Below, in pieces: positions 10,035 to 61,803 of a stretch of 64,000 bases of DNA. Numbering within the stretch: position 1 is the stretch's first letter; each line of letters begins with the position of its first letter. The stretch is from Ostrea edulis (taxonomy: Eukaryota). The DNA lies in assembly GCF_947568905.1 (NCBI RefSeq), contig NC_079166.1, positions 10,788,001 through 10,852,000 on the forward strand. The letters run 5' to 3'. Under the pieces are notes generated by a model, which was given only the letters and a program-made list of their open reading frames with translations, made no database searches and had not been told where the DNA came from. Both the position numbers and the translations under genes were made by a program.

Positions 10035-10040
<6 letters not shown>

Positions 10041-10088
<48 letters not shown>
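10041..10088. repeat. (TC)n microsatellite just after a strong donor (AAG|GTAAGC at 10034/10035)
   Basis: Direct observation. Confidence 0.95.
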
Positions 10089-10090
<2 letters not shown>

Positions 10091-12247: not shown

Positions 12248-12442
12248 GTAAAAATAAAATTATATAATTCTAAATTCTACTACGAAATGAGTTTCATATA
12301 TTTTATTAAAAGATCTAATAAAAATGTTTAACCTTAACTCTATCACGGTTATTGCAAAGATCAAAGCAATGCCGCGGTCATTATTCTGCGATATACTCTC
12401 AAACATAATAACTGATAGTGATTATAAGAACATTGTTACCTA

Positions 12443-40916: not shown

Positions 40917-41387
40917 CTTTTCCTGTAGTATTTAAAAGAAAAATTAATAACATCTATCAATGAATATGACATATTTTGTTAGCCATGAAATTCCTTGAGT
41001 CATACATGTATGTTAGATCAATCACTGTGATCCTGGAATTTTAACTTTAAATTTTAAGTTATATTTACCTCATACTGTGAGTGTAAATCTATTCAAAAAT
41101 GTTAGCGACTTACTTATTTTTTATGAATAACCTGTGCATGTATGGTGTTTGATAATTAAATCATGATTGTGAAGGAGAGCAATGTTGACATGTTTTAATG
41201 GATGAGATAATTTCCTGATACAAATCCACATTTTTCTCATACATGTAATTTTATGTTTTACTATATCTTGTCATCATGTTCACGTCACGTGCAATGTGAT
41301 TTTATGTTTTACTATATCTTGTCATCATGTTCACTTCACGTACAATGTGATTGTGGATTTCTGTATGTTTATATTTTCTATCCATAG

Positions 41388-41446
41388 TTTGGAAGTTTGT
41401 GAATGGATGTTTGAGCTATCTAACACAATTACAGCTGACAATCAAG
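41388..41446 (+). CDS. CUEDC2: CUEDC2 exon 3: LEVCEWMFELSNTITADNQ
   Basis: Acceptor ttttctatccatag|, donor AAG|GTAGGT, phase 2/1. Confidence 0.85.
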
Positions 41447-41734
41447 GTAGGTTTAGAATTTACTACTGTGATTTTTTGTAATTTTTACATTGAGAAAAGG
41501 TTCATGTGCTATAGGTGACTGTTGATCTGGACACTAGGGATCCAGGCCAAATCATCCAGATGAATGAAGCATCTGGATTACGTCATTAAAGATAAGATTA
41601 TTTTTGTAAAATTAATTTCCATGAAATACATATAAATGTACATGTATTTATTGTCCAGAAATTGAGTTCAAATAGGCAATTAATCTTCTACAAAAATTTC
41701 TAGATGTCTTGAAGTTTTAATGAGTCCATGCAAA

Positions 41735-42660
41735 ACACAGTACATGTACTACAGTCTTAATCATCCCAGACAATCAAAACACAGTAGATGTATTACAATC
41801 TTAATCATCCCAGACCATCAAAACACAGTACATGTACTACAGTCTTAATCATCCCAGACAATCAAAACACAGTAGATGTATTACAATCTTAATCATCCCA
41901 GACAATCAAAACACAGTACATGTACTACAGTCTTAATCATCCCAGACAATCAAAACACAGTACATGTATTACAATCTTAATCATCCCAGACCATCAAAAC
42001 ACAGTACATGTATTACAATCTTAATCATCCCAGACCATCAAAACACAGTACACATATTACAATCTTAATCATCCCAGACCATCAAAACACAGTACATGTA
42101 TTACAATCTTAATCATCCCAGACCATCAAAACACAGTACATGTATTACAATCTTAATCATCCCAGACCATCAAAACACAGTACACGTATTACAATCTTAA
42201 TCATCAAAACACAGTACACGTATCACAATCTTAATCATCAAAACACAGTACACGTATCACAATCTTAATCATCCCAGACCATCAAAACACAGTACACGTA
42301 TTACAATCTTAATCATCCCAGACCATCAAAACACAGTACTTGTATCACAGTCTTAATCATCAAAACACAGTACACGTATTACAATCTTAATCATCAAAAC
42401 ACAGTACACGTATCACAATCTTAATCATCCCGGACCTACACGTATCACAATCTTAATCATCCCGGACCTACACGTATTACAATCTTAATCATTCCGGACC
42501 TACACGTATCACAATCTTAATCATCCCGGACCTACACGTATTACAATCTTAATCATCCCGGACCTACACGTATTACAATCTTAATCATCCCGGACCTACA
42601 CGTATCACAATCTTAATCATCCCGGACCTACACGTATCACAATCTTAATCATCCCGGACC
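41735..42660. repeat. 44/34/32-bp compound minisatellite ending at the exon 4 acceptor tract
   Basis: aaaacacagtacatgtattacaatcttaatcatcccagaccatc and its deletion derivatives. Confidence 0.95.
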
Positions 42661-42673
42661 ATTTTATTCTTAG

Positions 42674-42789
42674 ATCTGAATCAAAGCACAGTGACTGCTG
42701 AAGATGAAGCGTTGCGTATAAAGGGAGATAAACACGAAATTCCACAGACAGAGGAGGAATCAAAAACTGAAGTCAATGGAAATGTTATG
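42674..42789 (+). CDS. CUEDC2: CUEDC2 exon 4 (acidic linker)
   Basis: Acceptor ttttattcttag|, donor ATG|GTAAAA, phase 1/0 keeps the frame. Confidence 0.8.
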
Positions 42790-43168
42790 GTAAAATAAAT
42801 GCTATTGATTCTTATACTTCTCTTTCCCTTTGTTTTGACAGGTGAAATAAAGTCTGGTCATAGTTTTAACCTACCATGGGTACTAATTCACACCATTTTT
42901 TGTTGAATATCAATTTTCATTGTTTTTTCCAGATGTAATGGACAAAGTACAAGGAATATTTCTCTGCTAAATTATATATCAGAGAAAATGTGCAGACTGT
43001 ATTTTGAATTCTGTTGAAAACAAATTTTCTTAAATGATGTCGTCCAATTTGTTGACATGATGTACTAGTCAACAGCCACATATTTGTGTGCAAGTTTTAC
43101 CTTCTTGCTGGCTAAAGCAAATTAGTTATCACATGATAATGATAAAGATTTTGAGATTGATATTTTAG

Positions 43169-43336
43169 GAGAATATGGAACCAGATGAAGATGTCAAGAT
43201 GCTTCTTGAAATGTTCCCCAATTCCTGCACACTTGAGATTACCCATTGTCTGGGGCTTGTGAAGGGGGATCTGGAATCAGCTGTACAGCTGGTACTGGAG
43301 AGAGAGGAGGCGGGCACCAGCATCAAAAGGTCAAAG
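43169..43336 (+). CDS. CUEDC2: CUEDC2 exon 5, CUE domain: LLEMFPNSCTLEITHCL...DLESAVQLVL
   Basis: MFP and di-leucine-like CUE motifs. Confidence 0.92.
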
Positions 43337-43683
43337 GTCAGGTGGAACATTCTGGTTATCTCTGCAGCAGAACTAAGGAAGATCTAAGTGCATCTGTTGT
43401 CTGTGTTGCTAAGCAGTACATAAGTTTTAATTTGAAAATGGTTAGGTGTGTTTACCCTTTCGATTGAGAAATTTATGTCAAAATATAGCATATTAGGAGA
43501 GTAATGGCCGTGATACAAATGATCCATCCAAAAAATAAAATCAGCACAAAATCCTTGTTTCACTTTACTCATTTTTCATCTTTATGAAATAGAATCTAAA
43601 AATCTCTTCCATGCTGCAATGTAAAGATATGATTCAAGATTTGTCTTCTGATAATTTTGTCCTCAATTTTGGGAAATAAAGTA

Positions 43684-43685
<2 letters not shown>

Positions 43686-43717
<32 letters not shown>

Positions 43718-43773
43718 TTTTCTGATCAAAATTTGTCCGCTGTCTGTCGTTGTTGTAAACTTTTCACAATTTT

Positions 43774-43818
<45 letters not shown>

Positions 43819-44594
43819 CAAAAGCATCCTTGGGTGAAGGGCTTTCAAGTTTGTTCAAATGAAGGGCGATGTCCCTTTCAAGGGGGAGATAATCACAAAA
43901 ATGCAAAAATAGGGTGGGGTCATTTAAAAATCTTCTCAAGAACCACTGGGCCAGAAGAGCTGAAATTTACCTGAAAGCTTCCTGACATATTGCAGATTCA
44001 AGTTTGTATAAATCATGGCCCCCGGGGGTAGGATGGGGCCACAAGGGGGGATCAAAGTTTTACATACAAATATATAGGGGAAAACTTTAAAAACCTTCTT
44101 TTCAAGAACCACTAAGCCAGAAAAGTTGAGATTTATATGAAAGCTTCCTGACATAATGCAGATTCAAGTTTGTTCAAATCATGGGGGTTGGATGGGGCCA
44201 CAATAGGGGATCAAAATTTTATATACAAATATATAGTTAAAATCTTCTTCTCAATAACCACTGAGTCAGAAAAGCTGATGTTTACAAGAAAACTTTCTGA
44301 CATAGTGCAGATTCAAGTTTGTTCAAATCATGGCCCCTGGGGGTAGGATGGGGCCACAAGTGGGGGGGGGGGGGTGTCAAAGTTTTACATACAAATACAG
44401 GAAAAATCTTTAAAAATCTTCTTCTCAAGAACCAATTGGGCCAAAGAAGTTGACATTTACATGAAAGCTTTCTGACATAGTGTAGATTCAAGTTTGCAAA
44501 AATCGTGGCCTCCAGGGGTAGTTGGGGCCATAATAGGGACTACGGTTTTACATGCATATATATATGGAAAGTCTTCAGATATGGGCCAAGGTGA

Positions 44595-44629
<35 letters not shown>
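43686..44629 (+). mobile_element. Helentron/HINE element with satellite array in CUEDC2 intron 5
   Basis: Same termini as 14041-15113. Confidence 0.9.
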
Positions 44630-44630
<1 letters not shown>

Positions 44631-44816
44631 TATTACGGTTCAATGCATTTTCTGGACTTGCGTGAACTGAATCATAGTCGGAACTCACAGATTTTGTCTC
44701 CGTAAACATCTGGGTTCCGATGTTGGAACTGAATATCACTCCTGAAATGGATAGAGTTTTACTAATTTATTCTGATAAAGATAACATTGTGATTGGATGA
44801 AAATATATTCTTCTAG

Positions 44817-44893
44817 GAAAAATCCAAATCTGCTTGTGAGAGAGGACCCTTGCTGTTAGATGACAAAGCAATGAAGAAAAAGATGATTGAAAG
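44817..44893 (+). CDS. CUEDC2: CUEDC2 exon 6: EKSKSACERG...KKKMIE
   Basis: Acceptor ttcttctag|, donor AAG|GTATGC, phase 0/2. Confidence 0.85.
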
Positions 44894-45059
44894 GTATGCT
44901 TAATGTACATGTATTTTCCTGAATGCAAATGGGTTTGTTTATAAAGATGGGATTCATTTACATTAAGCTTGCATTCATTTATGAATTTGGATTCATTTAT
45001 AAAGCTTAGATTAATTCCCAATACTTGTTTAAAATTCCCTAATTTTCTATTTTATTGCA

Positions 45060-45815
45060 ATTAGTCTGCGTCTGTTATCGTGCATTAACAATTGAACATT
45101 TTTAAATTCTTCTTGATAACTACCATTTCAATTCTTTTAAAAAAAAATTATGAAGCATCTTTTGGACAAGGGGGCATAAATTGAAGATTTCAGGAGTCCT
45201 GTACTACCTGGGCCTTAGGGGCAGGACAAAATATGCCAAAAATTGATCAATTTTCAAAAATCTTTTCTACAACCACACATTCACAAGAAAAACTAAGTGC
45301 ATAGTCATGTAGAACAGGAAGGCTTCTACCCGAATTGTTAAATATCATGATCACGGTCGTACATTTAGAAATTCTGGGAGGGGCCAAACTCAGTGCATGG
45401 TGTTTATATGTAAAATATTTAAACACATCTTCTTTAATGCTGTTAACACTGAATTGAAATTAGATATTTAGAAGGAACAGGTAACCCCCATCAAAATTGT
45501 AAATTTCATATCCCAGGGGTAGGAATTTTGGTACCAGGCCAAAATTATTCTAGTGATTATTGTCTTTATCATTCTCGATACTTCTCCTTTGATCTTTCTG
45601 ATACTGTATAAAAACTAAATGCATATTTTAGAAAAAAGCAGAAAGGTATGTACCAAAATTGTGAATGTTGTAACCCCAGGGTTTTGACTATAGGGCGGGT
45701 CCCTCCTGGTGCTGAATTTAGCTTAGACATGCAGAAAAGGAAAATTACTATATATTTTATGGCCATTGGGACTAGTGATACTTTTAACTAATGACCAATA
45801 ATGGGCCTCTTGTTT
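45060..45815 (+). mobile_element. Degenerate HINE element
   Basis: Diverged satellite-like body ending aatgggcctcttgtt. Confidence 0.55.
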
Positions 45816-46090
45816 ATAAAGCCACTACATGCCACATTACTGGTGCCAGGTTTTGCCTCTTGTTTATAAAGCCACTACATGCCACATTACTGGTGCCAGG
45901 TTTTGCCAATTTCAGTATGCAGCAAATCCGAATATAGGAGAATGGTCTGGATTACCAGTTCCCTATCTCCAGCATACTCAGGATGCATTCCTGTGCAACT
46001 TTGGGAAAATTTCTGTACACCCCTTATGAGACAAGGATAACAGAATATTGTAATCTGAGAGATAAATATTTCTTCATACAATTTATTCAG

Positions 46091-46151
46091 ATATGGCTAT
46101 CAAGATACAGATGATGATAAGAAGACATTCAAACCACCACCCCTTAAACAG
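46091..46151 (+). CDS. CUEDC2: CUEDC2 exon 7: YGYQDTDDDKKTFKPPPLKQ
   Basis: Acceptor atttattcag|, donor CAG|GTAGGT. Confidence 0.9.
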
Positions 46152-46249
46152 GTAGGTCAAATTTCTAGCAATAACATTCACTTCCTCTCTAATTAGAATT
46201 AATCAAGGGACCCTGCTAATTTAATCTGTTCTTGCATGGCCACCTTTCT

Positions 46250-47035
46250 GTCTGTTTCAGTGATAATCTGTCTGTCTGTGTGACTTGAACTGAGACATAG
46301 TGAATCCCTGATAATCTGTCTGTGTGACTTGAAGTGAGACATAGTGAATCCCTGATAATCTGTCTGTGTGACTTGAACTGAGACTTGGTGAATCCCTGAT
46401 AATCTGCCTGTGTGACTTGAACTGAGACATAGTGAATCCCTGATAATCTGTCTGTGTGACTTGAACTGAGACATAGTGAATCCCTGATAATCTGTCTGTG
46501 TGACTTGAAGTGAGACATAGTGAATCCCTGATAATCTGTCTGTGTGACTTGAACTGAGACATAGTGAATCCCTGATAATCTGTCTGTCTGTGTGACTTGA
46601 AGTGAGACATAGTGAATCCCTAATAATCTGTCTGTGTGTGTGACTTGAACTGAGACTTGGTGAATCCCTGATAATCTGTCTGTGTGACTTGAAGTGAGAC
46701 ATAGTGAATCCCTGATAATCTGTCTGTGTGTGTGACTTGAACTGAGACATAGTGAATCCGTGATAATCTGTCTGTCTGTGTGACTTGAAGTGAGACATAG
46801 TGAATCCGTGATAATCTGTCTGTGTGACTTGAACTGAGACATAATGAATCCGTGATAATCTGTCTATGTGACTTGAACTGAGACATAGTGAATCCCTGAT
46901 AATCTGTCTGTGTGACTTGAAGTGAGACATAGTGAATCCCTGATAATCTGTCTGTGTGACTTGAACTGAGACATGGTGAATCCCTAATAATCTGTCTGTC
47001 TGTGTGACTTGAACTGAGACTTGGTGAATCCCTGA
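46250..47035. repeat. 44/48-bp minisatellite in CUEDC2 intron 7
   Basis: gaatccctgataatctgtctgtgtgacttgaactgagacatagt. Confidence 0.95.
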
Positions 47036-47242
47036 TGACCTTGGTCGGTGAATCCCTAATGACTTTTGTCAAAGCTTTTTATCAGACATGTATGTCAAAA
47101 GCCAAAATACGAATTTATGACCATTTCAATTTGCCACCATTGTTTCAAACATATTATCTTTGCTCCCTTGCACGAAAATTGATGAGTTTATTGACCCCCA
47201 TACAATATTCCATGTATTGTTGTGTCTCTTCCTTGTTATGAA

Positions 47243-47566
47243 GCTCGGCGGTTGCAGCATTTGCCTCATGACTGGGAGCTGTAGGTTTGAGCCCCACTTG
47301 TACCTTGGCTGCATCGAACTAAAGGAGTGAAAATAAGTTGTGACTGCTCCTTTGATAAAAGTCATTTAAAAGTGATGGTTGCTGGTCTTTTAGATGAAAT
47401 TTTAATCAACAAAGGTCCTGTGTCACGACAGGTACTTCCTAGATAAAGAATCCTCACTGCTACAGCCCTGAGTGTCATGCATGAGTGTAATTTTGTGGCA
47501 CTTCGCCAACAGCTGTTGGTTTATCAACATCAGTGAAAAATTCTCCAAGGGACGTAAAACAAACAT
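47243..47566 (+). mobile_element. Degenerate full-length tRNA-derived SINE
   Basis: tRNA-like head, aaggtcctgtgtcacgacagg...gataaagaatcctcactgct core, aaaacaaac tail. Confidence 0.7.
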
Positions 47567-47774
47567 TACGTTGTGGTGACCTTATCATCCCTTTTACAGG
47601 CTTTCAAGCAGGCCCTTATTTTCCTTATTTTTCTACAACAGCCCTTATTTTCCTTATTTTAGCTTTAGAATCCTAAAAAAGCCCTAATTTTTTGTTGAAA
47701 TTCCTATATTTTCAAATTTTGAAAGTTTAAATAAATTTGACATAAAGTAAGTGTTGGAATTTATTAAATTTAGT

Positions 47775-48240
47775 CTTAGTATACTTTCAGAAAATAAATA
47801 TGTTGACATGGAATTAGATAAGATACCGCAATTAAACTATGAACCAAAATTAGTGCAGATTAAATCTATAATCAAACAATGGGAGAAAAGGTTTTTAACT
47901 CCCATAGGAAAAATTACAGTTATTAAGACATTGGTTTTGCCATTATTAAACCATATTTTAATGTCAATCCCAAATCCTTCTGAACTCTACCTTAAGGAAT
48001 TAAAAAAGATATTTTTCTTGTTTATATGGAATAATAAATTACAGGGTCAAAAAGGAGGTCATTGTTAAAAAATATGAAGATGGGGGTTTAGAAATGGTAA
48101 ACCTAATGGCATTCATAGCATCTATGAAGTTGTTTTGGATAAGAGTTCGTATGTTTTCAAATAGAGGGATGGAACATTTTATTCCAAAGTTGGACTTCAG
48201 CAAATTAGTAAACTGTGGAGTAGGGGATTTTCGAGTTCTT
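47775..48240 (+). mobile_element. Truncated L1/Tx1-type LINE ORF2 fragment
   Basis: IKQWEKRFLTPIGKITVIKTLVLP...FIWNNK, then a frameshift to RVKKEVIVKKYEDGGLEMVNL. This is the post-RT region of Tx1/L1 elements. Confidence 0.8.
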
Positions 48241-48328
48241 CCATGTCCGTGTGTATTCTGCATAATTAAGAATATCGTATTAAAAAATGATTGAATTTGA
48301 TTACGGTATGTTCTTTTTTTATGAATAG

Positions 48329-48475
48329 GAACCAAAGAAGATGGTTCGCTATCTTGATGGTCGTATCGTGAGCACAAAAGGAGAGCGATTTACTGAGATT
48401 AAAAAGGAAGATACAGAGGAGCTGAAAAAGACTTTCATAAACCTAAAACCTGCAAAAAAGTATCGTTTTCATTGA
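48329..48475 (+). CDS. CUEDC2: CUEDC2 exon 8 (last): [21 protein letters not shown]...[12 protein letters not shown]
   Basis: Diagnostic C-terminus (cf. human VSTKGERF...INLKPARKYRFH). Total CDS is 855 nt = 284 aa. Confidence 0.96.
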
Positions 48476-49928
48476 TATCGGAGGTTTCAATCAGTCATTA
48501 GGATCTCTTATCACCTTTTACATCAACGCTTTTGTCGTAATATACTGTGGTCTTGTCGATATTCTTGGGCATGAAATTTTGTGGATTTCTCATTTTTGTT
48601 AATACCAGTACATAATTTCATGGAAAGGTACTTTTTGTTCCTTCATTTTAATTGTACTACATTAATCACTTCCTGTCTGGCATCTGACCATAAAGACGAA
48701 GAAAACTGGGCGGGGCCAGGTATGCAATGAAAAATTCAGAAACTACAACAGAAGTTTGAAACATTTGACATACAAAATGTCTACATTCCCAATACATACA
48801 CTGAATGTGTTCAATATAGAATATCTGCATGTAAAGATTTTTACTACAATGCAAGAAACAATACGTACAAGCATTCACACAAAAGTCTTGCCAATTAAGC
48901 ATTTATATATATGTAACTCTGTTAAGGGTCCTGAATTGAACAAATGTGTGATCTTCATGTGATATTTTTCATATCAGCATTATACATTTAGAGCATTATT
49001 AATGTTCAAGTTTTAATTTTAGTCAGTTTTATTTCATCTCTTGAAAGAAATTTATTTATATTGTCCATAAACACATTTTTAATTGTCTTTAATGTTGAAC
49101 AAAGAAATTTTCTATTAAAGGCTTCTATACAGCTTACTGACAACAGACACAATAAAGGCATAGTTTGGGTAGATTTTGAAATAAGGATATCACTACAATC
49201 ATGACACAGGGATATCACCCATTTATTATATGTGATACATGGGTCACTGATCTGAGTAGTGATATCATCTACTTCAAAATTTAAAAGATGCCACTAATAA
49301 ACAAGAGGAGGATGTCGTACGATTGGATCAATGTCACTGGAAAATGATGAAGTGATGCATCTTAATGATTTCAATAGGTACATATGTGTGATCACTTGTT
49401 TAAAACGATTCAGGGATATTACTTAAATAATTATTCTGTGTAGTACATGTACATATATAGATGATATCACTCAAATGAATAAGTGGTAGTTTTAGGGGTG
49501 GACAGGATATAGAAGGAGAAGGGAGACCACTCCTTTTCCCTGATGATATCACGGAATATTCATTTGAATTAGTGATATCCATAATAATTCTTTTTGTAAT
49601 GTCCCTTAATTGCATATTAGTGATATAGGAATTTAATACAAGTGGAAGTTGAAAAGTCTACCTACAGCTACAGAACAATTAGGTTAATAAAATTTAACTT
49701 CACTACGCAACGAGTTGTTAAATTACATTTGTAAGATGCAAGCGTCTTCATGTAGTGTAAAGTAAATTTTTCAAACTATAGTTTTTTGGCATTTTTAAAG
49801 AGCAATTCAGGTTAGTTGTGTAATACTGCAGAATCCTGTGTAGAGAGTATGTATTCCTCCTGTTGTAGGTAATATTTATATCACGGAGGTTTTTGTGGTT
49901 ATTGATATCATCATTTTATTATGTGTAT

Positions 49929-50969
49929 TTTTAGCTCACCTGAGCCAAAGGCTCAAGTGAGCTGTTCTTAAAATCAGAATTTGTCTGTTGTCAGCATCAT
50001 TGGCATTGTAAACTTTTCACAATTTCATCTTCTTCTTTAGAACTATTGGACCAATTTCAACCAAACTTGGCACAGAGCTTGAATTAAGGGGATTCAAGTT
50101 TGTTAAAAAATGAAGAGCCATCTCCCCTTCCAAGGGGATATAATCAAGAAACAAAAATAGGGTGGGGTCATTTAAAAATCTTCTTAAGAAACACTTGGCC
50201 AGAAAGGATGAAACTTTTTTGGGAAGCTTCCTGACATAGTGAAGTTTGCCCAAATCATGGCTCCCAGGAGTAGGATGGGGCCACAAAAGAGGATTAAATT
50301 CTTATGCGTAGGAAAAATCTTAAGCACAACTGGGCCATGATTAGACATATCAATAAGCAAGCATCTTCATGTAGTACAGAATCAAGACCATGTACACCAG
50401 GGGTAGGGTAAGGCCATGTGCACCAGGGGTAGGGTAAGGCCATGTACACCAGGGGTAGGGTAAGGCCATGTACACCAGGGGTAGGGTAAGGCCATGATAG
50501 GGGAACAAAGTTTTATATGGGAATAAAAAGGTTTTTAAAGAGCTTCTCATGAACTGCTAGGCTAAGGTTAGTCATGTCAACAAGCAAACATCCTCAAGGG
50601 TAATGCAAATTCTAGTTTATTCAAATACTGGCCCTAGAGGGTCGGGTTGAACCACAATAGGGAATCTAAATTTTATATGGCAATATATGGGAAATATATC
50701 TTTAGATCTTCTACTGTACTGTAAATTCAATTCCCTGGTAATCATGACCTGGGAGGATGGGGTTAGATGGGGGCATTGAAAGGTAATCAAAGTTTAACAT
50801 GACAGCATATACATGTTGGAGAAAATCTTATTCTCAAGAGCAGCAGATGCTTCCAATGCATGGCAATTCTTCGTGAGAATGAAGAGCCCGTTTAAAAATC
50901 AATCTTCTGATGAAGAACAGCAGGGCCAATATGACTCAGGTGAGCGTGTGACCCATGGGCCTCTTGCTT
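49929..50969 (+). mobile_element. Diverged Helentron/HINE element containing a 26-bp tandem repeat (50388-50497)
   Basis: ttagctcacctgagc ... tcaggtgagcg...ccatgggcctcttg. Confidence 0.85.
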
Positions 50970-52982: not shown

Positions 52983-54040
52983 TATATGAGCCATAACGCC
53001 CTGCCCTAACAACAGAACCCCTCCCCTAACAACAAAACCTCTGCCCTAACAACAGAGCCCTAACCCTGGAGTCATGAATTCTACAGATTCCAATTATACA
53101 GTTAGAATGATTAGTGATAAAATTCGGATAACATTGAAATAAAGACTTGGTCAGAGCACTACCACTTAGGATTTATTTGTTTTGTTTATAGAAAATATAA
53201 TAGATGTTAAATATATAATATGAAATATATATATACATGTATTACAAATAATCATAATCATTAATAACCCATCATGGCAGCATAATATAAAATGCAAATC
53301 ATCAAATTACGAATGTCATTGCCACTGGTCATCACATGAATATACAATGTATGTTATAACCGGTGTTGTATATTTTACCAATATTGAGGATAAAAGGATA
53401 AATTTCATAAAGATCGTTCCAAAATGTCCTCGCTATAATACAGCAAACTTTGATGTAAATTAATACACGTATATAAAGCAGTATTGAAGAGAAAAACATT
53501 AGTTTTCATACTTGTATATTTGCTAAGTGTTAAAAATAAAAGAAATTATTATACCTCAGTATGAGAATTCTATGCAATGAGTAATCAGATTGGTCTAGAC
53601 GGTCACATGCCATGGATAACAAAACTTCATATCTCCCTCTCAAACATCATATCTCCCTATCATATTTACCGCTTGGGCAGCCTTGTGTATTTTCCATAAA
53701 TTTAACGTCAAAGACGACGAAATGTATTGTGACGTCTCAATAAGTCCGAGTCATTCTACTTCCATAATTCCTAAGGCACAAAACATGCGGTTCTCTGATA
53801 CACAGTTAAATCCCCTGATTTTGGTTGATACAAAAACAAGCAAATGAGCATTCAAGGAGAATGGTAAAACAAAAACTGGTTATCATATCACTGTATTTCG
53901 CTGTTTGTACCTTCTAATTCATTGAGGCGTGGTGTTACCGTTAGGGCAATCTCAGCTACATACATGTACAACGTATAGATGAGCGGACTCCAATCTCAAA
54001 TGCAATTTTGTGGTCTTGCTTTGTTTCGGTATAATAAACA

Positions 54041-54181
54041 ATTTATTGCATGAATGTTTGGGAGATATGAAGATTTATTCACCCAAGAAAAATCATATTC
54101 CCCTCGGGCGTTGCCCTCGGGGAATATGACTTTTCTTGGGTGAATAAATCTTCATATCTCCCTCACTATCATGCAATAAAT
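54041..54181. mobile_element. ~140-bp palindromic mini-element
   Basis: 49-bp inner stem with 3 mismatches around loop gtt, plus an outer stem atttattgcatga/tcatgcaataaat. Confidence 0.8.
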
Positions 54182-56348
54182 GTATAATCTTGAATAATAT
54201 CTTCATAATGCCTTTCAAATTCATGAAAATGTTAAAGGATTATAATTCTCTATGTATACAAATGTTTTATATATAATAATTAATGTGCCATGCCACTTAA
54301 ACACTCGCAGTGCAATTAATCATGAGCAATAAAAAATAAATATATATAAAATATCAATTATCTAAATTCATCAATGTGATATATTTCACTGACATCTTCC
54401 ACCATTAAATACTGATACCAATGTATCACAGGCTTTGCTAATGGTCGATAATTTCACAACCTCAAAACCCTCCTGTCAACTATTGAATTATACCGGTATA
54501 TTCCGCAGTTGTCTACATTTTGCAGATAAGAAAAATCCACAAAAACTATACATTCCAAAAATATTCTAAACAACAAACTATATCATCTAAGTGTACATGT
54601 ATTTTTATAATGCAGCCACAGAATATAATTTGCTACCTTTCAGGGATCAAATCTAAAAAATTTCCAACTCCAAAAATACATGTTAATTATTATATATAAC
54701 CGAAAATGTCAATTCATACATGTTAATTAATATATATACCTGGAAAGTGAACATGTTAATTATTATATATAACCGAACATGTCAATTTTCATACCGGGAA
54801 TGCTGAATCTGTCCATGCAGAAATTTTAAAAACTTTTTATAGTTGCTTGTGGACACACACCCCCTCCCCTCGTATTTTTTAATGTTCAATGCCTAGGGTA
54901 TAATAAGTGTATATTTTTCACAAAATATTTAACTATAGGGTGTTTTTATATTCAATGAAATAAACAAATTCCACATAAAAACCATTTTGTGTCGAGATCT
55001 ATTATGATCAAGGATATGACTGTTTACCTTTATGATTTAAAAACTGCTTCCATGTGGATCTGTTTCAGTAAATTTTGTGAAAAATATATGCTAACCCAGG
55101 GCATTTGACATTGCAAAATACAAGGATTTTGGGGGAGTCCTGTCCACAAGCACCCGTGAATCTTTCAATTCAAATATATTAGTTTCCATGCTTCAATCAG
55201 GAAAATTTTTCTTAATACATGTACGATATTTTACCGCAAGAGTGATTTCAAGACATGTGGTAAAAATCAGTGGAGCTTTCTAAGTTTCAAACTCAACGTT
55301 CATCAAGTACAGTTCTCATAATATGAGATATTATCTACCCTTAAGATTTTTATATTTGAAATATTATATGGCATTGCATGTATAGATCAATTAGACTAGC
55401 CTACATACTGCATATTGGGATCTTAATTTTCATTTATAGCCCTGATGCATTGCAATTTAATTTTGACCTGTTTTATTAAACTACATATTATTATATGATG
55501 AAGATTTTGTTTGTTCAGAGTGGTCTTGTTTCACAAAAAATTATAATTGCTGCAAGAAAGATAGATAGGGCCAATATGTTGGGGGTGGGGTGGGGGGTGG
55601 GGTAGAAACATGATTCCCATTGTACAATCTACTATCTTCTACAACCTGTGATCAGTAAAATCTACCATAACAGATCTATAAACTCAATTAAGAAATATAT
55701 TTCATACCGGCGTGAACTGTGATGCTTCACGACAGCATACTTCATTTAATGATCAGGAAGCGTGTTAGGGCTTCGTGAAAAGTATGCCGACATGAAGCGG
55801 CACTGCAGCACATTCTCGAGGATACAGCTATCTACCATTACAATTTGTAAATTATCAAAGCCTTGAAAGGCAAATACATTACAAATGTAAACTATGTCCA
55901 TCATTAAATCACTGATGATTTTCGATTCATGAATTCAAATACATTTTTTAAAAATTCAATAATAATCAACATTATTCAATAATTGTAATAAATAATATCA
56001 AATTTTCAGGGACATAGGATCTGTGGAATAAAAATTTAATACGATTATAATATAAAATGCACCAAGTACAAATCTTTGACACATACATCTGGTATACACT
56101 GGAATGATGTAAAGCATTTAAATGAATCATGTTTGGGAATTCAAAACAAATACATGATTAGCACCACAAATCCCTTGATGGATGAAACTTTTAATTGTGG
56201 ACATATGTGTACATTCCAATATACCACAGTGACTGTATTTATGATCGAGTTAGATCTTGCAACTAATATCACAGATTCACAGTTTTATAATGGTGTAGAT
56301 AATAAAACTGCCCCTTCATCATTAGATGCCCGTAGACGGTTGGTAGCT

Positions 56349-57503
56349 TTATCCCCCTATTAAAATCATAGGCCTGTTTTTCATTTTGGATAGGTTAAAC
56401 ATCCCTGCATGCTGTTTTTTCTTGCGTTTGACAGCCTCCTCAATGACCTGCCATATTTCCTCATCCTCTGCTTCTCCACGGAGGAGGTCTCTCAAAGACA
56501 CTTCAGCATTCCCAAACAAGCACACCTTCAAGTTTCCGTCAGCGGTGACGCGGAGCCTATTGCAGGATCCACAGAAATGTTCGCTCATGGAGGTGATGAA
56601 CCCTAACTGTCCAACATGTCCTGGAACTTTGTAGGCTTTTGAAGTATCATTAGCCTGATCGGACATTCGTTGGAGGTCTGGATAGCTCGATTTTATAGTG
56701 TCAATCATTTCAGCATAGGACACCATCTTCTTAAAGTTCCACCTGTTTCCATCAAACGGCATGTACTCAATAAACCGAACATCCACATTTTTGTCCTTTG
56801 TCAGATTGACAAAGTCCACTATTTCCTCCTCATTCACTCCTCTCATCACCACACAGTTCACTTTCACTGGACTGTATCCCAAATCCAGTGCAACATCAAT
56901 GCTTTTCATCACTCGGTCCCACCCCTTCCTCCTTGTGATAAACTCAAACTTTGCAGGAATTAGGGTATCCAGACTGATATTTATCAAATTTAGGCCAGCT
57001 TCCTTCAGTAGAGGCAATTTCCTTCCCAGTGTTACTCCATTTGTCGTCATAGCTATTGTCTGCAAACCATGTTGAGAACCATAGGAATTTATCCCCCGAA
57101 CGATGTCCACAAGGTCGGCTCGCACTAAAGGCTCTCCTCCAGTCAGGCGGATCTTGTTTACTCCCTGTCTCATGAACAATTCTGCAATGCGTATTATTTC
57201 CTTGCCGGACAGAATCCGCTCCTTGGGTGTTAAGTCCACCCCTTCCTCTGGCATGCAGTACTGGCACCGTAAGTTGCATCGCTCACTTATTGATATTCTG
57301 AGGTAGTTGTGGTGTCTCCCAAATAAATCTGTCAATACTGATGTCTTCTTTTCTTTAGGTTCGGACACAGTGGGTTTTTCTTCCTCAGTCTCCTGCTCCA
57401 GGCACGTTGTGAACTGTGTTCGCCTTCCTACGATCCTCCCGGTGGCTGGGTAACCAGAACACGTTTGAATATTCCGAAACGCTCCTAAAAATCGTCTCCT
57501 CAT
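56349..57503 (-). CDS. MOCS1: Molybdenum cofactor biosynthesis protein MOCS1A (GTP 3',8-cyclase, MoaA), intronless, 384 aa
   Basis: Radical SAM CxxxCxxC (RCNLRCQYC), LTGGEP, C-terminal cluster CGSC-x13-C, essential C-terminal MILIGG*. First ATG is 57503 (the ORF track start at 57566 is TTG). Arg-rich N-terminus. Confidence 0.96.
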
Positions 57504-58574
57504 TTTAGAAAAATTCCAGCAACAACAAAAATTTGTGACCCGACAGTCAGGTAAGATATAGGACAACAGGATCAGGAATTAGGTCATATTGACAAACGTC
57601 TACATGAAGTTAAATCAGTTGATGGCGTTAAGCAAAAGTAAGTTTTTAGTTGGTACGTTGAATAAGTCCTGTTTTCTACGTCATTTATAAAATGTTTCTG
57701 CACACATGGCAGAAGTATGACCCCTATGTCAACAATCTCAAAGTGAAAATGAAAGTACTTGCGATCTTAGTAAGTCTTTCTCGAAAGATTTCATGCATCG
57801 AAATATTCATATTATTCAGAGAAACAAAATATGCCGATGTTAAAGATGCATTTAATACGCTAAGTTAGCACGTATGAAGAACAAAAAGAATAGAAAAAAT
57901 CCAAAAAATTCTGCAATCTTCATAGTTTATCACTCTTGGCACTAGGTGGCGCTTTAGTACACCCGCCATACCGAATATTTTGTTTAACTTGGATTCGTGT
58001 GGACCTATTGTTTCGAATAGATCTCTTAAAGAAGAAAGGAAAACTTTGGTAAGAACGGACTTTATAGATATTGTTTTCCGCAAAAGAGTAATTATTTACG
58101 AAACTTTTTATTTCACTAGGATTAGCTTTCGGATATTTTCAAATCTGCACCAACTCGGTTGAATGTAATTTCATGTTATTTTAAAAGAAATAGTGTTGTA
58201 AAAGGAAGATCCATTTCATTCACTTCAATTACATAAGGACAATGTTTATCTTGAAGCGGGCACGTGTAAAGTATATAATCTTAGTGTAGTGTAAGCAAGA
58301 CGTGATAACGGGTACAAAACAATGGAGGAAATTCGAGCGATTTAAAAACAAGAACATCTACTCAGTGCAGAGTGACGTTACTCACATTTATGAATATTTA
58401 AGCCGTAAGAATGTGTGTTTCCACTAGCTTTTACAATGTCAAAGTCTTGCAAAAAATGGTGAAATTAGAACTACAAAATTTGCAAGCAACATGTATTTGG
58501 CCACCAAACAAGTCGGTTTATTTGATTTGAATCCCAGAGAAGAAAAATATACTTGCAATGGACCTTATTGTCAG

Positions 58575-58757
58575 GTATGTATATGATCATTCATGTTCTA
58601 TTTAATGCATGAAATAGTGAATTACTTGAAATTTAATTCCATTGTCAACATATATATTCTTGTACTTAAATTTACTAGAGAAAGTGGGAAACACACATTT
58701 TTAGAGGCACAGAAAAAATTCTATTTTTATGGATTATAGTTTGTTATTCTTTTCCAG
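58575..58757 (+). other. Probable 5'UTR intron of the CCDC191-like gene
   Basis: Donor CAG|GTATGT and acceptor ttattcttttccag|. Confidence 0.6.
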
Positions 58758-58866
58758 ATCCCGGGAAAAATGTCCAAGGATCAACAGATGACATGAGGAG
58801 ACCAGGTGAAAGGATTAGGTGAAATGATATAGAAATTCTCAGTGCTTTTCCTTCACTGGAGTGAAA

Positions 58867-61803
58867 ATGTCTGACAAATTCCATAAAGATGGTCTCTACA
58901 AATGGAAAAAGCAAACTGATAATAAAGTGTATTCCAGGTCACAAAAAGTGGCAACAACCAGTGATATTCAAAACTGGATCCAAAAAGTTGAACAAGCCTC
59001 AGAAAAGGCAGCAGAAAGTGTCTTTCAAGGAAAGCCATCAAGGCACCATTCAGGAAAGACTGTTACAGCTTTGAAGACTCTAGATCAACTTAGGGAACAT
59101 GACACAGCTCTCACAGAGGCTCAGGACCTCCTGTCACAGTGGATGGAAGAGAAGGTCTGTCTGGATGTGGATGACGATGGAGGAGGAGATGCTTACAGCG
59201 ATGATGCTCTGCATCAGAGGAGATTAGAATCAAATGTCAAGAAAGAATGGGATCATTTGTTAGATAATAACTATGAATTGTATGATGTACCAAGAAAACA
59301 AAAAGTCAAGGAAGATAAATCTGATCCATATGCATTTCTTGATAAAATGGATGACAGTGAAGCTGTGGAGTCCATCCTAGAACATATGCTGAATAAAAAA
59401 CTGGTGAAAGAAGCATTTACTGAGGACCTTGGTTTGAATGAAATGTCAATATACAAAGATCCCAGAACTAAAATGGAGCTAAGACATAAACAAGTGAAAG
59501 AAAATCGGGAGAAGAGAGAGAAAGAGTTGTTGAGGAAAAGACAAGAACGGCAGGCCAAGAAGACAGCTCAAAATCAAGCGAAAATAATAATAATGAAGGA
59601 AGAAAAGGACAAATTGATGAAGGCTAGGCAGGAGGAGATGGCTATAAAGAAGGAGATGGCCCGTATTAGGAAAGAGATGCAGGAAGAAAGACAGAAGCAA
59701 AGAGACGCCAAGAAAAGTGAAGAGACCGAGAAGAAAACCATCATGTCTGAGGCCAAACTTCACGTGGATCAGGAGAGAGAGAACGAGAGAGCAGAAAGAT
59801 TACAAAAGCAGCTGGAAATGGAAGAAAGACAAAGAGTTCTCATTCAAAAAATGGAGGAGATGGAAGTTCGTAGGAGGGCTAATGAAATGAAAATTTTGCA
59901 CAACTGTTTTAGGGCCTGGTATAATGTTGCTCTGGAGAGAAGAATGCAAATGGGGAAAGCAAGAGCCCTGTCTGATTGGAAGTTGCTTCTCCGAGCTTGG
60001 AATGCATGGTCGTCTGTGATACGTTCTAAAAAGTTAGAGATTGAGGCAAGACAGCACGAAATTGATGTCATTAAATCCCACAGAAACATCCAGATTGCAG
60101 AAAAGCACCACAGACATGGATTACTGAAGAAATATTTTCTGGCCTGGCAAATATGGATACACCAGGAACAGGAGAGGAAAGAAATGAAAAACATGCAGGA
60201 GGAAACAAAGAAGAAGATGACAGTATTTTTGGAGGCTGCGTCTGAGGGAAAGTTGTGGGAAAGTACTGTTGATGACTCTAGTGAAATTATAAAGGTCCAG
60301 AAAATGCCTTCAGTGAATGTGGATGATTTTTTCAACAGTCAACCAAAACGACCTTCAACTTCTTTGAGTACTGTTTCCTCTAATGCAAGTGATCCCCAAG
60401 AACGGAAAGTGTCTCGTCCAAACAGAATTCCAACACAGGCATGGCAGGTGAACAGGAGGCATCTGAACCTCACTCCTGAGGAAATAGCAAAACTGGGAGG
60501 AGGTGAAGAAATTGATGAGCAGGAGAGGCCTACAGATCTTCAAGTCCGAAAGAGATTTGGAACTCAGCCATGGATGAACACAAAATACATTACCAATAAC
60601 TTCGAAAATCGACACAACTCTCAGCAGAAGATTATCAAAGACCAACAAAGGGAGTTACAGGAACAGAGGAGAATGATAGAGGAATTGCAATTCACACAAC
60701 AAAAACAAAAGCTGCAACAACAGGCAAACACACAAAAAGAAATTCAAAGTTTATTAGATAAACAACCAATGTCAGAAAGTGTGCTGAGGGAGAGAGGGTG
60801 GCTCACATGTCAGACAGGTTCCAAGAAAGATGAAACAAATAGAACTCCTAGAAATAAGGAACATCAAAAATATCCTGAGACTGACAGGTCACCTGCTAAT
60901 GAAGGTGACAAGACAAATAGAACAAATGTTTCATCAGCAACAGCTGGTTCGTTAAAGTCCAACAGCAAGTACTTATCCCTTCAGAAAAAGATGGATGAAA
61001 GAGCAGCCGAAAGGGCGAAGGCAAAAATGGAGAGGGAAGAAAAGCGGAGACAGATGGAAGAAGAGAAACTGGAGAAGCTCAAAGCTGAAGAGGAAGAACT
61101 CATTCAAAAAGAGCAAGAGGAGAAAAAGGCTAGGATTTCTGCACTCCAGGAGAAAAAGAAACAGGAAAAGTTGCGGGATCAAAGAAAGCTGGAACAAGAA
61201 GAGAAAATGAAAACACTAAGTGCAATGGCAGATAAGCACTACCTCAAGTCATTGATGAAGTACAAAGGTATGATTAGATTCAAAAAGTTGGTGGAAAAGT
61301 CGAGACAAAATGAGGTGAAAGCCGTGAAACACTGGAGAGATTGTTTGAAGAGGAAATTATTAAGGCAGTGGAAGGAGAACGTCAGAGAAATTCAACAAGT
61401 AAAGGAGAAAATGGCGGACAAGATGTTTGAGTACATATTGATCAAAAGGTGCTTCAAAAACTGGAGACTTGTTAAAAATCATGTGGAGATTCTTGAAGGA
61501 AGAGCAAAGCGTTATTACAACAGAAATTTGAAAAACAAGATTTTCTTAATGTGGCGTGACTGGGCACAGCATGAAAAAGTAGACAATATTGAAAAGGAAC
61601 GGAGAGCCAGGGAACATCGTGTCTGGAATTTGAAGTCTAAGTATTTTCACAAATGGAGAAGGCACCCAGAGGAATTGAAGAAAGAGAAGGCACGTGAAAA
61701 ACGGAGAAAAGAAATGCGATTGACTGTTGCTGCGCTTCTACCGGACTATGAGGGGAGTGGGAGAAAAAGTCAAACTGTAGATGAGGAGTATAGATACAAT
61801 TAG
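58867..61803 (+). CDS. CCDC191: Coiled-coil domain-containing protein 191-like, single-exon CDS, 978 aa
   Basis: Blocks DIQNWIQKVEQASE, EAQDLLSQW and DPRTKMELRHKQVKENR, with W-containing repeats. In-frame TGA at 58825 precedes ATG 58867 (track start 58861 is GTG). Confidence 0.85.
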   Translation: MSDKFHKDGLYKWKKQTDNKVYSRSQKVATTSDIQNWIQKVEQASEKAAESVFQGKPSRHHSGKTVTALKTLDQLREHDTALTEAQDLLSQWMEEKVCLDVDDDGGGDAYSDDALHQRRLESNVKKEWDHLLDNNYELYDVPRKQKVKEDKSDPYAFLDKMDDSEAVESILEHMLNKKLVKEAFTEDLGLNEMSIYKDPRTKMELRHKQVKENREKREKELLRKRQERQAKKTAQNQAKIIIMKEEKDKLMKARQEEMAIKKEMARIRKEMQEERQKQRDAKKSEETEKKTIMSEAKLHVDQERENERAERLQKQLEMEERQRVLIQKMEEMEVRRRANEMKILHNCFRAWYNVALERRMQMGKARALSDWKLLLRAWNAWSSVIRSKKLEIEARQHEIDVIKSHRNIQIAEKHHRHGLLKKYFLAWQIWIHQEQERKEMKNMQEETKKKMTVFLEAASEGKLWESTVDDSSEIIKVQKMPSVNVDDFFNSQPKRPSTSLSTVSSNASDPQERKVSRPNRIPTQAWQVNRRHLNLTPEEIAKLGGGEEIDEQERPTDLQVRKRFGTQPWMNTKYITNNFENRHNSQQKIIKDQQRELQEQRRMIEELQFTQQKQKLQQQANTQKEIQSLLDKQPMSESVLRERGWLTCQTGSKKDETNRTPRNKEHQKYPETDRSPANEGDKTNRTNVSSATAGSLKSNSKYLSLQKKMDERAAERAKAKMEREEKRRQMEEEKLEKLKAEEEELIQKEQEEKKARISALQEKKKQEKLRDQRKLEQEEKMKTLSAMADKHYLKSLMKYKGMIRFKKLVEKSRQNEVKAVKHWRDCLKRKLLRQWKENVREIQQVKEKMADKMFEYILIKRCFKNWRLVKNHVEILEGRAKRYYNRNLKNKIFLMWRDWAQHEKVDNIEKERRAREHRVWNLKSKYFHKWRRHPEELKKEKAREKRRKEMRLTVAALLPDYEGSGRKSQTVDEEYRYN

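What the first reader, a model, noticed from the sequence alone, without database searches (positions are those of the whole stretch)
56349..57503. Stand-alone, intronless MOCS1A with no MOCS1B partner
Seen: a complete MoaA ORF in one exon, with both Fe-S motifs and the GG C-terminus. After TAA the frame closes within 9 codons. I see no MoaC-like sequence (LTH...MVDV) downstream to CUEDC2, and no donor at the position where vertebrates splice around the GG-stop exon. Known: vertebrate and Drosophila MOCS1 is a multi-exon bicistronic locus that makes MOCS1B as a spliced fusion, whereas plants and nematodes use separate genes. Inference: a retroposed MOCS1A, meaning either the mollusc locus has split or a second MOCS1A copy exists.
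Basis: partly seen in the sequence, partly recalled or inferred. Interest (0 to 1): 0.75.

Follow-up and report, generated by a model that had tools for sequence, protein, structure and literature searches.

The report
Oyster MOCS1 split into two genes
In true oysters the usually two-in-one molybdenum-cofactor gene MOCS1 has come apart: MOCS1A survives only as this intronless, expressed, selected copy. Its partner MOCS1B sits on another chromosome as an extra last exon of the mitochondrial elongation-factor Ts gene, where gene models splice it into a fusion protein.

Summary
Window 56349-57503 (minus strand) is an uninterrupted 384-aa MoaA/MOCS1A ORF with both Fe-S motifs and a GG-stop end. 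It is the only MoaA match in this 895-Mb genome (Ostrea edulis by record match).

It is conserved and in use. dN/dS against Saccostrea is 0.045. It is covered by one unspliced, RNA-like contig. It lies in the same neighbourhood in Saccostrea cucullata, between CUEDC2 and a 980-aa coiled-coil gene.

Pinctada, Mytilus and Haliotis keep a 15-23-kb multi-exon MOCS1 with a separate GG exon and a terminal MoaC exon; scallop, clam, Solemya and chiton gene models keep the MoaA-MoaC fusion protein. The split is therefore specific to true oysters and fits retrogene replacement.

The "missing" MOCS1B is the genome's single MoaC match, on contig C2, 445 nt downstream of the stop codon of mitochondrial EF-Ts (TSFM), same strand. 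A conserved weak donor inside the last TSFM exon and a conserved acceptor 20 nt before the MoaC ATG join in frame. NCBI models in three oyster species, named only "elongation factor Ts-like", encode EF-Ts(N-terminal half)-MoaC fusions. This resembles vertebrate MOCS1AB with a new carrier gene.

I could not check the fusion RNA myself. The scan's earlier notes held nothing on it.

The parts
56349..57503 (-). MOCS1A (MoaA, GTP 3',8-cyclase) coding sequence: single exon, 384 aa, GG-TAA end. It is the only MoaA copy in the genome.
   Evidence: dN/dS 0.045 against Saccostrea
56206..57666 (-). Minimal extent of the MOCS1A transcript, colinear with the genome: about 160 nt of 5'UTR, the CDS, and at least 140 nt of 3'UTR. 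An ATTAAA signal lies at 56195.
   Evidence: run X1 (a related species, about 97% identical, RNA-like). Record 7 (1361 nt) lies on 56314-57666 and record 6 on 56206-53. The flanks have no depth.
57667..58018 (.). Shared divergent promoter region of at most 353 bp between the observed 5' ends of MOCS1A and the neighbouring coiled-coil gene. It holds two patches conserved between oyster genera (57940-57996 and 57695-57756).
   Evidence: contig ends at 57666 and 58019; 85% and 77% identity to Saccostrea; 91% over 55 nt to a third oyster, L020
58019..61803 (+). Divergent neighbour: a 5'UTR exon ending at 58047, a GT..AG intron at 58048-58756, then a 980-aa coiled-coil ORF with no coding intron at 58861-61803. 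No Pfam family matches it.
   Evidence: (joint 58047->58757); the orthologous 973-aa gene sits in the same position in Saccostrea
41368..48502 (+). CUEDC2 exons, convergent with MOCS1A. The roughly 7.7-kb gap between the two 3' ends holds no MoaC relic.

Best explanation
The window ORF is the oyster orthologue of MOCS1A. This enzyme is the mitochondrial radical-SAM GTP 3',8-cyclase that carries out the first half of cyclic pyranopterin monophosphate (cPMP) synthesis.

In the ancestor of true oysters, a processed MOCS1A-type mRNA that still included the GG-stop exon was most likely reverse-transcribed and inserted between CUEDC2 and a coiled-coil gene. There it is transcribed from a short region shared with the divergent neighbour. 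The multi-exon parental MOCS1A exons were then lost; this is retrogene replacement.

The other half of the old locus is the MoaC-encoding terminal exon (MOCS1B). It now lies on another chromosome, 445 nt downstream of the TSFM (mitochondrial EF-Ts) stop codon. A weak donor inside the last TSFM exon can splice in frame to a conserved acceptor 20 nt before the MoaC ATG. The product is an EF-Ts(N-terminal half)-linker-MoaC precursor. TSFM's targeting signal and/or the basic linker would take it into mitochondria, and it would presumably be cleaved to free MOCS1B, as in vertebrate MOCS1AB.

Shown here:
- single copies of MoaA and MoaC on two contigs;
- no coding intron in MOCS1A, with conserved gene neighbourhood in two oyster genera;
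- multi-exon fused genes in the outgroups;
- purifying selection on both genes;
- an unspliced MOCS1A transcript;
- TSFM-MoaC adjacency and conserved splice sites in four oyster taxa;
- fusion gene models in three species.

Inferred: the retroposition mechanism, promoter sharing, that the fusion mRNA is the working route to MOCS1B, and import and cleavage.
For: - **Copy number.** One MoaA match and one MoaC match in the genome, on contigs C3 and C2.
- **MOCS1A ORF.** Full-length Pfam domains and the expected motifs.
- **Saccostrea.** The S. cucullata MOCS1A is also a single exon, with the same neighbours.
- **Outgroup gene structure.** Mytilus has about 8 coding introns across this ORF, Pinctada 7-8 and Haliotis at least 6. 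Each also has a separate 18-aa GG exon and a 262-267-aa terminal MoaC exon. Boundaries at oyster aa 238, 290, 327 and 367 are shared.
- **Outgroup proteins.** MoaA-MoaC fusion proteins occur in Pinctada, Mercenaria, Ruditapes, unionids, Solemya, scallops and a chiton.
- **Descent.** The MoaA tree follows the species tree. The oysters form a 100/100 clade inside bivalves.
- **Selection.** dN/dS is 0.045 for MOCS1A and 0.13 for MOCS1B, with dS 1.6-1.9.
- **Expression.** An RNA-like contig is colinear with window 56314-57666. The same run carries a spliced GT..AG joint in the neighbouring gene.
- **New locations.** No flank synteny with the Mytilus or Haliotis MOCS1 loci. No MOCS1 relics beside oyster LIN52 or around MoaC. 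No TSFM within the 10-kb flanks of MOCS1 in Pinctada, Mytilus or Haliotis.
- **TSFM-MoaC adjacency.** The last TSFM exon sits directly upstream of MoaC in this genome, L019, L022 and Saccostrea L030.
- **Acceptor.** The pyrimidine-run-CAG|AT acceptor is the most conserved block upstream of MoaC.
- **Donor.** The donor G|GTCTCTGTCA is invariant in four taxa, including three synonymous sites.
- **Gene models.** NCBI 'elongation factor Ts-like' models of O. edulis (X1 and X3-X7), S. cucullata and S. echinata carry EF-Ts_N + EF_TS(1-102 of 204) + MoaC. Their junction is exactly at these sites.
- **Start codon.** Both Saccostrea species lack the ATG at the start of the MoaC exon.
- **Canonical EF-Ts.** A 300-aa canonical EF-Ts also exists (P0397).
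- **Precedent.** In human MOCS1 the linker encoded by the 5' part of exon 10 carries an internal import signal and a processing-peptidase site (bioRxiv 10.1101/429183).
Against: - No poly(A) remnant or target-site duplication flanks MOCS1A. The 3' flank is not even alignable with Saccostrea, so retroposition rests on intron loss and location alone.
- The outgroups do not share MOCS1 neighbours with each other, and only 10-kb flanks could be seen. The ancestral position is therefore unknown.
- I could not lay reads on the TSFM-MoaC junction, so the fusion rests on predicted (XP_) gene models.
- No Logan-derived protein with the EF-Ts + MoaC architecture appeared among the 120 listed hits.
- A junction-sequence scan of metagenome contigs gave only chance hits.
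- O. edulis, L019 and L022 do have an ATG and a basic, acid-free N-terminus on the MoaC ORF, so autonomous translation is possible there.
- The RNA nature of run X1 is a guess. It is supported only by its exon-limited coverage and one spliced joint.
Confidence: 0.8

Rival explanations
1. Intron loss in place. MOCS1A stayed at the ancestral locus and lost all its introns by recombination with a cDNA. Only the MoaC exon moved away, through a breakpoint in the last intron.
For: No retroposition scars remain. The ancestral neighbourhood of MOCS1 cannot be fixed, because the Mytilus, Haliotis and Pinctada flanks differ from one another.
Against: None of the three outgroup loci has CUEDC2, CEP85 or the coiled-coil gene within 10 kb. 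Clean simultaneous loss of 7-8 introns, with the GG-stop exon kept in its MOCS1A-type spliced form, is the classic signature of a retrocopy.
Confidence: 0.13
2. MOCS1B is an independent gene with its own promoter and ATG just downstream of TSFM. On this view the EF-Ts-MoaC fusion models are read-through or annotation artefacts, or a minor by-product.
For: A 200-aa ORF with an ATG and a basic, acid-free 47-residue N-terminus is present in O. edulis, L019 and L022. No transcript-derived fusion protein was seen. The internal donor is weak (AAG|GTCTCT).
Against: The sequence 20 nt upstream of the ATG is a textbook 3' splice site and the best-conserved non-coding block, so an upstream exon is needed in any case. 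Nothing else is conserved between the TSFM 3'UTR and that site. Both Saccostrea species lack the ATG. Three independent annotations use the same in-frame junction.
Confidence: 0.3
3. The window ORF is a redundant retrocopy or a decaying pseudogene, and a normal MOCS1 gene does the work elsewhere.
For: It has no introns.
Against: It is the single MoaA match in the genome. dN/dS is 0.045 at dS of about 1.9. All motifs are intact. It is covered by an RNA-like contig. It lies in the same gene neighbourhood in another genus.
Confidence: 0.02
4. Bacterial contamination or horizontal transfer of moaA.
For: It has no introns, and MoaA is common in bacteria.
Against: It is 73-75% identical to scallop MOCS1 and nests inside bivalves in the tree. 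It has animal gene neighbours in a conserved neighbourhood. It carries a mitochondrial-type N-terminal extension.
Confidence: 0.01

Closest known systems
Vertebrate/Drosophila bicistronic MOCS1 (type I mRNA gives MOCS1A; type II/III splicing gives the MOCS1AB fusion, later cleaved to MOCS1B)
   Same: The two enzymes and their domains are the same, including the GG end needed for MOCS1A activity. MoaC again sits in one terminal exon preceded by a basic linker. The proposed oyster MOCS1B route repeats the same logic: a donor upstream of a stop codon splices to the MoaC exon, and the resulting precursor has an incomplete N-terminal domain that serves as a carrier (10.1101/429183).
   Different: In oysters MOCS1A is a separate single-exon gene on another chromosome. 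The carrier for MoaC is the N-terminal half of mitochondrial EF-Ts, not MOCS1A. Co-regulation of the two steps through one promoter is lost.
Separate MoaA and MoaC genes in plants (Cnx2/Cnx3), nematodes and bacteria
   Same: The two activities are encoded at unlinked loci, and MOCS1A ends in GG-stop.
   Different: The oyster state is secondarily derived from a fused animal gene. Its closest outgroups keep the fusion. MoaC is not free-standing but embedded in another gene.
Retrogene replacement / 'orphan' retrogenes (for example amphioxus SYCP1, PMC5803294; human orphan retrogenes, PMC3548309; seen, abstracts only)
   Same: A single-exon copy of a multi-exon gene survives in a new location, uses neighbouring regulatory sequence, and the parent is lost.
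   Different: Only one cistron of a two-product gene was replaced, which forced the other product to find a new host gene. Scars of retroposition are no longer visible.
Exon capture and chimeric genes made when a terminal exon lands downstream of another gene
   Same: An upstream gene's donor splices to a foreign terminal exon and yields an in-frame chimera.
   Different: Here the captured exon encodes an essential, ancient enzyme, and the host is a functionally unrelated protein of the same organelle. I found no paper that mentions both TSFM and MOCS1 in this sense.

Membership tests
MoaA / MOCS1A (GTP 3',8-cyclase) | Radical-SAM core with an N-terminal CX3CX2C cluster motif | tested here: met
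   Pfam PF04055, 116 bits; CNLRCQYC at aa 76-83
MoaA / MOCS1A (GTP 3',8-cyclase) | C-terminal Mob_synth_C domain with the auxiliary-cluster cysteines | tested here: met
   PF06463, 143 bits, profile positions 1-127 of 128; CX2CX13C at aa 311-328
MoaA / MOCS1A (GTP 3',8-cyclase) | C-terminal double glycine directly before the stop codon | tested here: met
   ...PMILIGG-TAA. The requirement for GG is cited in 10.1101/429183.
MoaA / MOCS1A (GTP 3',8-cyclase) | Orthology to animal MOCS1 (vertical descent) | tested here: met
   Tree: the oyster clade (100/100) lies inside bivalves and molluscs
MoaA / MOCS1A (GTP 3',8-cyclase) | Catalytic activity and mitochondrial location | not testable with these tools
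   Only an arginine-rich N-terminus with no acidic residue in its first 35 positions
Functional (orphan) retrogene | No introns where the orthologues have many | tested here: met
   None here, against about 8 coding introns in Mytilus, 7-8 in Pinctada and at least 6 in Haliotis. The mRNA contig is colinear with the genome.
Functional (orphan) retrogene | Genomic location unrelated to the parental locus | tested here: inconclusive
   The neighbours differ from all three outgroup loci. However, only 10-kb flanks were seen, and the outgroups differ among themselves.
Functional (orphan) retrogene | Poly(A) tract and target-site duplications | tested here: not met
   None found, and the 3' flank is unalignable with Saccostrea. 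This is expected at dS of about 1.9, so it is weak evidence against.
Functional (orphan) retrogene | Parent gene lost; the copy is under purifying selection and expressed | tested here: met
   Single genomic match; dN/dS 0.045; RNA-like contig
MoaC / MOCS1B (the partner, on G000:C2) | Full-length MoaC domain, single copy, under selection | tested here: met
   PF01967 positions 1-136 of 136, 181 bits; dN/dS 0.13
MOCS1AB-like spliced fusion precursor (here EF-Ts-MoaC) | A donor upstream of the host's stop codon joins in frame to the MoaC exon acceptor | tested here: met
   Both sites are phase 1 and conserved in four oyster taxa. The junction is identical in gene models of three species.
MOCS1AB-like spliced fusion precursor (here EF-Ts-MoaC) | The fusion mRNA or protein actually exists, and is imported and cleaved | not tested
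   The read tools were already spent on the window. The metagenome junction scan gave only chance hits.

The most novel reading that the evidence does not exclude
After MOCS1 came apart in the oyster ancestor, its MoaC exon was adopted by an unrelated mitochondrial gene, TSFM. Alternative splicing from inside the last TSFM exon now makes a truncated-EF-Ts-MOCS1B precursor. This rebuilds the 'inactive carrier domain + linker + MoaC' design of MOCS1AB with a different carrier. In Saccostrea, where the MoaC exon has no start codon of its own, it may be the only route to MOCS1B. The unspliced TSFM mRNA might then be the counterpart of the bicistronic type I transcript.
Probability: 0.55. Interest if true: 0.75.

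Novelty: new variant of a known kind. Interest (0 to 1): 0.62.

Why it matters
MOCS1 is a textbook case of two enzymes of one pathway step held in a single alternatively spliced locus. The fusion has been traced back to the unikont/bikont junction (10.1101/429183).

Oysters provide a natural experiment in which that linkage was broken. It shows that the arrangement is not obligatory in animals. It dates the change to after the split from pearl oysters. It also suggests why MoaC may need a carrier: when it lost MOCS1A as its host, it appears to have acquired another mitochondrial protein as host rather than becoming free-standing.

There is a practical side too. In three annotated oyster genomes the MoaC enzyme is hidden under the name 'elongation factor Ts-like', so pathway reconstructions would wrongly score the second half of cPMP synthesis as missing.

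Tried and rejected
- **A second MoaA or MoaC copy in the genome.** None found.
- **MoaC relics downstream of MOCS1A in the window**, as expected if a bicistronic type I mRNA had been copied. None at E<1.
- **MoaA exon relics within about 50 kb either side of the oyster MoaC exon, and beside oyster LIN52** (LIN52 is the upstream neighbour of MOCS1 in Mytilus). Nothing better than E=0.06.
- **Flank synteny of the Mytilus and Haliotis MOCS1 loci with the window or the C2 region.** None.
- **TSFM next to MOCS1 in Pinctada, Mytilus or Haliotis**, which would have allowed a simple deletion model. Not seen within the 10-kb flanks.
- **Poly(A) tract or duplications around MOCS1A.** None.
- **RNA support.**
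  - No listed run is on record as RNA.
  - Runs X3, X5 and X6 behave as DNA. Only X1, from a related species, looks like RNA.
  - Contigs L018 and L019 include TSFM intron sequence, so they cannot show transcription.
- **Exact-protein look-ups for Mizuhopecten X1 and Pecten X2.** Both failed.
- **Two scans of metagenome contigs for the spliced TSFM-MoaC junction.** The first gave no hit. The second gave four chance hits with no EF-Ts or MoaC. This is no evidence either way.
- **Literature.** No paper links MOCS1 with oysters or with TSFM in this sense.
- **Earlier scan notes.** They hold nothing on MoaC or TSFM.
- **No complex or structure prediction was run.** None of the claims depends on one.

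Full report
**1. The observation**

On the minus strand of the window an open frame runs from ATG at 57503 to TAA at 56349-56351. It is 384 codons long and uninterrupted.
- Pfam finds Radical_SAM (aa 70-234) and Mob_synth_C (aa 240-366) well above their thresholds.
- The N-terminal CX3CX2C motif is at aa 76-83.
- The auxiliary-cluster CX2CX13C motif is at aa 311-328.
- The terminal residues are Gly-Gly.
- The frame closes again nine codons after the stop.
- There is no GT donor at the GG position.
- Nothing MoaC-like exists in the 64-kb window.

**2. Copy number and identity**

A six-frame search of the whole 895-Mb assembly finds only this MoaA match. It also finds a single MoaC match, on a different contig: G000:C2:51672355-51672762, minus strand, in one open frame.

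The best named relative of the MoaA protein is Saccostrea cucullata (85% identity, 390 aa). Later record matches identify the genome as Ostrea edulis: the NCBI proteins concerned lie on a contig of exactly the length of C2.

**3. The MOCS1A gene is old, selected and expressed**

- In S. cucullata the orthologue is also a single exon of 1173 nt. It has the same neighbours: a divergent 973-aa coiled-coil gene, CEP85, and a convergent CUEDC2.
- Against Saccostrea, dN is 0.088 and dS is 1.93, giving dN/dS 0.045.
- A maximum-likelihood tree places five oyster sequences in a 100/100 clade. That clade is next to scallops (weak support, 87/68), within bivalves (96/86) and molluscs (96/98). This means vertical descent, not transfer.
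- Of the four runs laid on the window, three are plainly DNA.
- The fourth, X1, is from a relative about 97% identical, and it covers only exon-like parts. One 1361-nt contig is colinear with 56314-57666.
- A contig of the neighbouring gene in the same run carries a GT..AG joint from 58047 to 58757.
- So MOCS1A is transcribed unspliced. Its observed 5' end lies at most 353 bp from the neighbour's first exon.
- Two short patches in that interval are conserved between oyster genera. This fits a shared divergent promoter, which is an inference.

**4. The outgroups keep the classical locus**

- Exon mapping shows that Mytilus californianus (15-kb gene), Haliotis cracherodii (23 kb) and Pinctada imbricata (17 kb) interrupt the region homologous to this ORF with roughly six to eight introns.
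- The intron positions at oyster aa 238, 290, 327 and 367 are shared.
- All three have a separate 18-aa exon for the GG end and one terminal exon of 262-267 aa holding a linker plus MoaC.
- In the Mytilus and Haliotis fusion proteins the splice leaves the GG exon just before GG. The Pinctada model joins the exon before it directly to the MoaC exon.
- Fusion proteins with MoaA and MoaC domains are also listed for scallops, Mercenaria, Ruditapes, two unionids, Solemya and a chiton.

The intronless, separate MOCS1A is therefore derived. It arose after true oysters split from pearl oysters and before Ostrea and Saccostrea diverged.

**5. How MOCS1A got there**

All introns are gone at once, and the GG-stop exon is retained in its MOCS1A-type spliced form. 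None of the three outgroup loci shares a neighbour with the window. Retroposition followed by loss of the parent (retrogene replacement; compare PMC5803294 and PMC3548309) is the simplest account.

No poly(A) tract or target-site duplication remains, and the 3' flank cannot even be aligned with Saccostrea. The outgroups are not syntenic with each other, and only 10-kb flanks were visible. Intron loss in place therefore cannot be excluded; I give it about 13%.

**6. Where the partner is**

The MoaC ORF is 200 aa from its first ATG and carries the full PF01967 domain. It lies 445 nt downstream of the stop codon of an exon encoding the C-terminal end of EF-Ts (profile positions 166-204 of 204), on the same strand. 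Further EF-Ts exons lie 50 and 80 kb upstream.

The same adjacency is seen in two other oyster contigs, L019 and L022, and in S. cucullata L030.

Residues 17-195 of the oyster ORF align with the distal part of the Mytilus terminal exon. The oyster MoaC exon is thus a shortened homologue of the ancestral last exon, and its own lack of introns says nothing about how it moved.

There are no MoaA relics around it. TSFM is not next to MOCS1 in Pinctada, Mytilus or Haliotis within the flanks seen.

**7. A predicted and then confirmed splice**

Reading the sequence, I noticed a pyrimidine run ending in CAG 20 nt before the MoaC ATG.
- It is the most conserved block in a three-oyster alignment of the upstream region.
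- It is in the same phase as the conserved acceptor of the last TSFM exon.

An all-against-all protein search with the MoaC ORF then returned two top hits: a 358-aa protein identical over all 200 residues and a 435-aa protein at 74% identity.
- Both carry EF-Ts domains in front of MoaC.
- They are NCBI models named 'elongation factor Ts-like': isoforms X1 and X3-X7 in O. edulis, and single products in S. cucullata and S. echinata.
- Their junction (...LTK-D-RGVTRS-MASVF...) uses that acceptor together with a donor inside the last TSFM exon (AAAG|GTCTCT).
- The donor is invariant in four taxa, including three synonymous positions.
- In both Saccostrea species the ATG at the head of the MoaC exon is replaced. 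There the fusion, or initiation at a Met 30 residues further in, is required.
- A canonical 300-aa EF-Ts, in which the last exon is read through to its own stop, also exists in oysters (P0397).
- Among the 120 best hits, the EF-Ts + MoaC architecture occurs only in Ostreidae.

**8. Proposed mechanism**

MOCS1A, made from its own gene and carrying an arginine-rich presequence, converts GTP to 3',8-cyclo-dihydro-GTP in the mitochondrial matrix.

MOCS1B is made as an alternative 3' end of TSFM.
- The precursor has the TSFM presequence, a truncated and presumably inactive EF-Ts core (profile 1-102 of 204), a basic linker and MoaC.
- The linker has no acidic residue over 47 positions and holds a motif HR(N/S)F conserved among the four oyster sequences aligned.

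In human MOCS1AB the corresponding linker carries an internal import signal and a processing-peptidase site, and the MOCS1A part is inactive because the GG end is spliced out (10.1101/429183). The oyster arrangement would be the same design with a different carrier.

The weak donor suggests the fusion is the minor isoform.

What is not shown: that the fusion mRNA is real and sufficient, that the protein is imported and cleaved, and whether O. edulis also translates the 200-aa ORF directly.

**9. Limits**

- The read tools were used on the window before the TSFM link emerged, so I have no junction reads.
- The fusion rests on predicted models plus conservation.
- No Logan-derived fusion protein was listed.
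- A metagenome scan for the junction gave nothing usable.
- The RNA nature of run X1 is inferred.

**10. Verdict**

MOCS1A here is an orphan retrogene shared by true oysters (confidence about 0.8 for the split and replacement).

The more unusual part is the fate of MOCS1B as a spliced passenger of TSFM (about 0.55-0.6). I found no paper describing it, and current annotations hide it under an EF-Ts name.

I rate the finding a new variant of known kinds (the bicistronic MOCS1 locus; retrogene replacement; exon capture), with interest 0.62.

Noticed in passing
window 57942-57996: A 55-nt element in the divergent promoter region between MOCS1A and the coiled-coil gene is 85% identical in Saccostrea and 91% identical in a third oyster (L020:407-461). 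The surrounding non-coding DNA does not align. It is probably a shared promoter or regulatory element.
   Followed up: partly
window 58019-61803: The 980-aa coiled-coil ORF next door has no coding intron and matches no Pfam family. It does have a spliced 5'UTR intron (58048-58756, GT..AG) in the RNA-like run X1. Its orthologue (973 aa) holds the same position in Saccostrea.
   Followed up: partly
window 53600-54190: Summed contig depth in the DNA runs jumps from under 200 to roughly 20,000-480,000 in runs X3 and X5 (and from about 5 to 2,000-13,000 in X6). Many short joints and loose ends occur at 54186-54188. This looks like a very high-copy repeat or satellite ending abruptly at about 54188.
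   Followed up: no
window 50007-50715 and L003:2007-3478: An array of repeats with a period of about 167 nt (the unit starts in L003 are 166-167 nt apart) is shared at 66-82% identity between this genome and Saccostrea, but at different positions relative to the genes.
   Followed up: no
G000:C2:51673369-51752343 versus L030:8828-11888: The TSFM-MoaC gene spans at least 80 kb in O. edulis but about 3 kb from first mapped exon to stop in Saccostrea cucullata. An O. edulis model (P0401, 'uncharacterized protein LOC125682093 isoform X2', 421 aa) joins the first roughly 100 TSFM residues to an unrelated ORF. This suggests a gene or mobile element inside the enlarged intron.
   Followed up: no
L031:18068-18112 and 18236-18280: In the Pinctada imbricata MOCS1 locus, the last 15 codons of one MoaA exon recur twice in the intron just downstream, at 100% identity to the Pinctada protein. 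They look like small local duplications.
   Followed up: no
L019:1424-1435 and L022:1501-1512: In two oysters the first bases after the MoaC-exon acceptor read ATC ATG GTG TGA, a two-codon upstream ORF. In O. edulis the ATG is GTG. It might affect direct translation of the MoaC ORF from unspliced or alternative transcripts.
   Followed up: no
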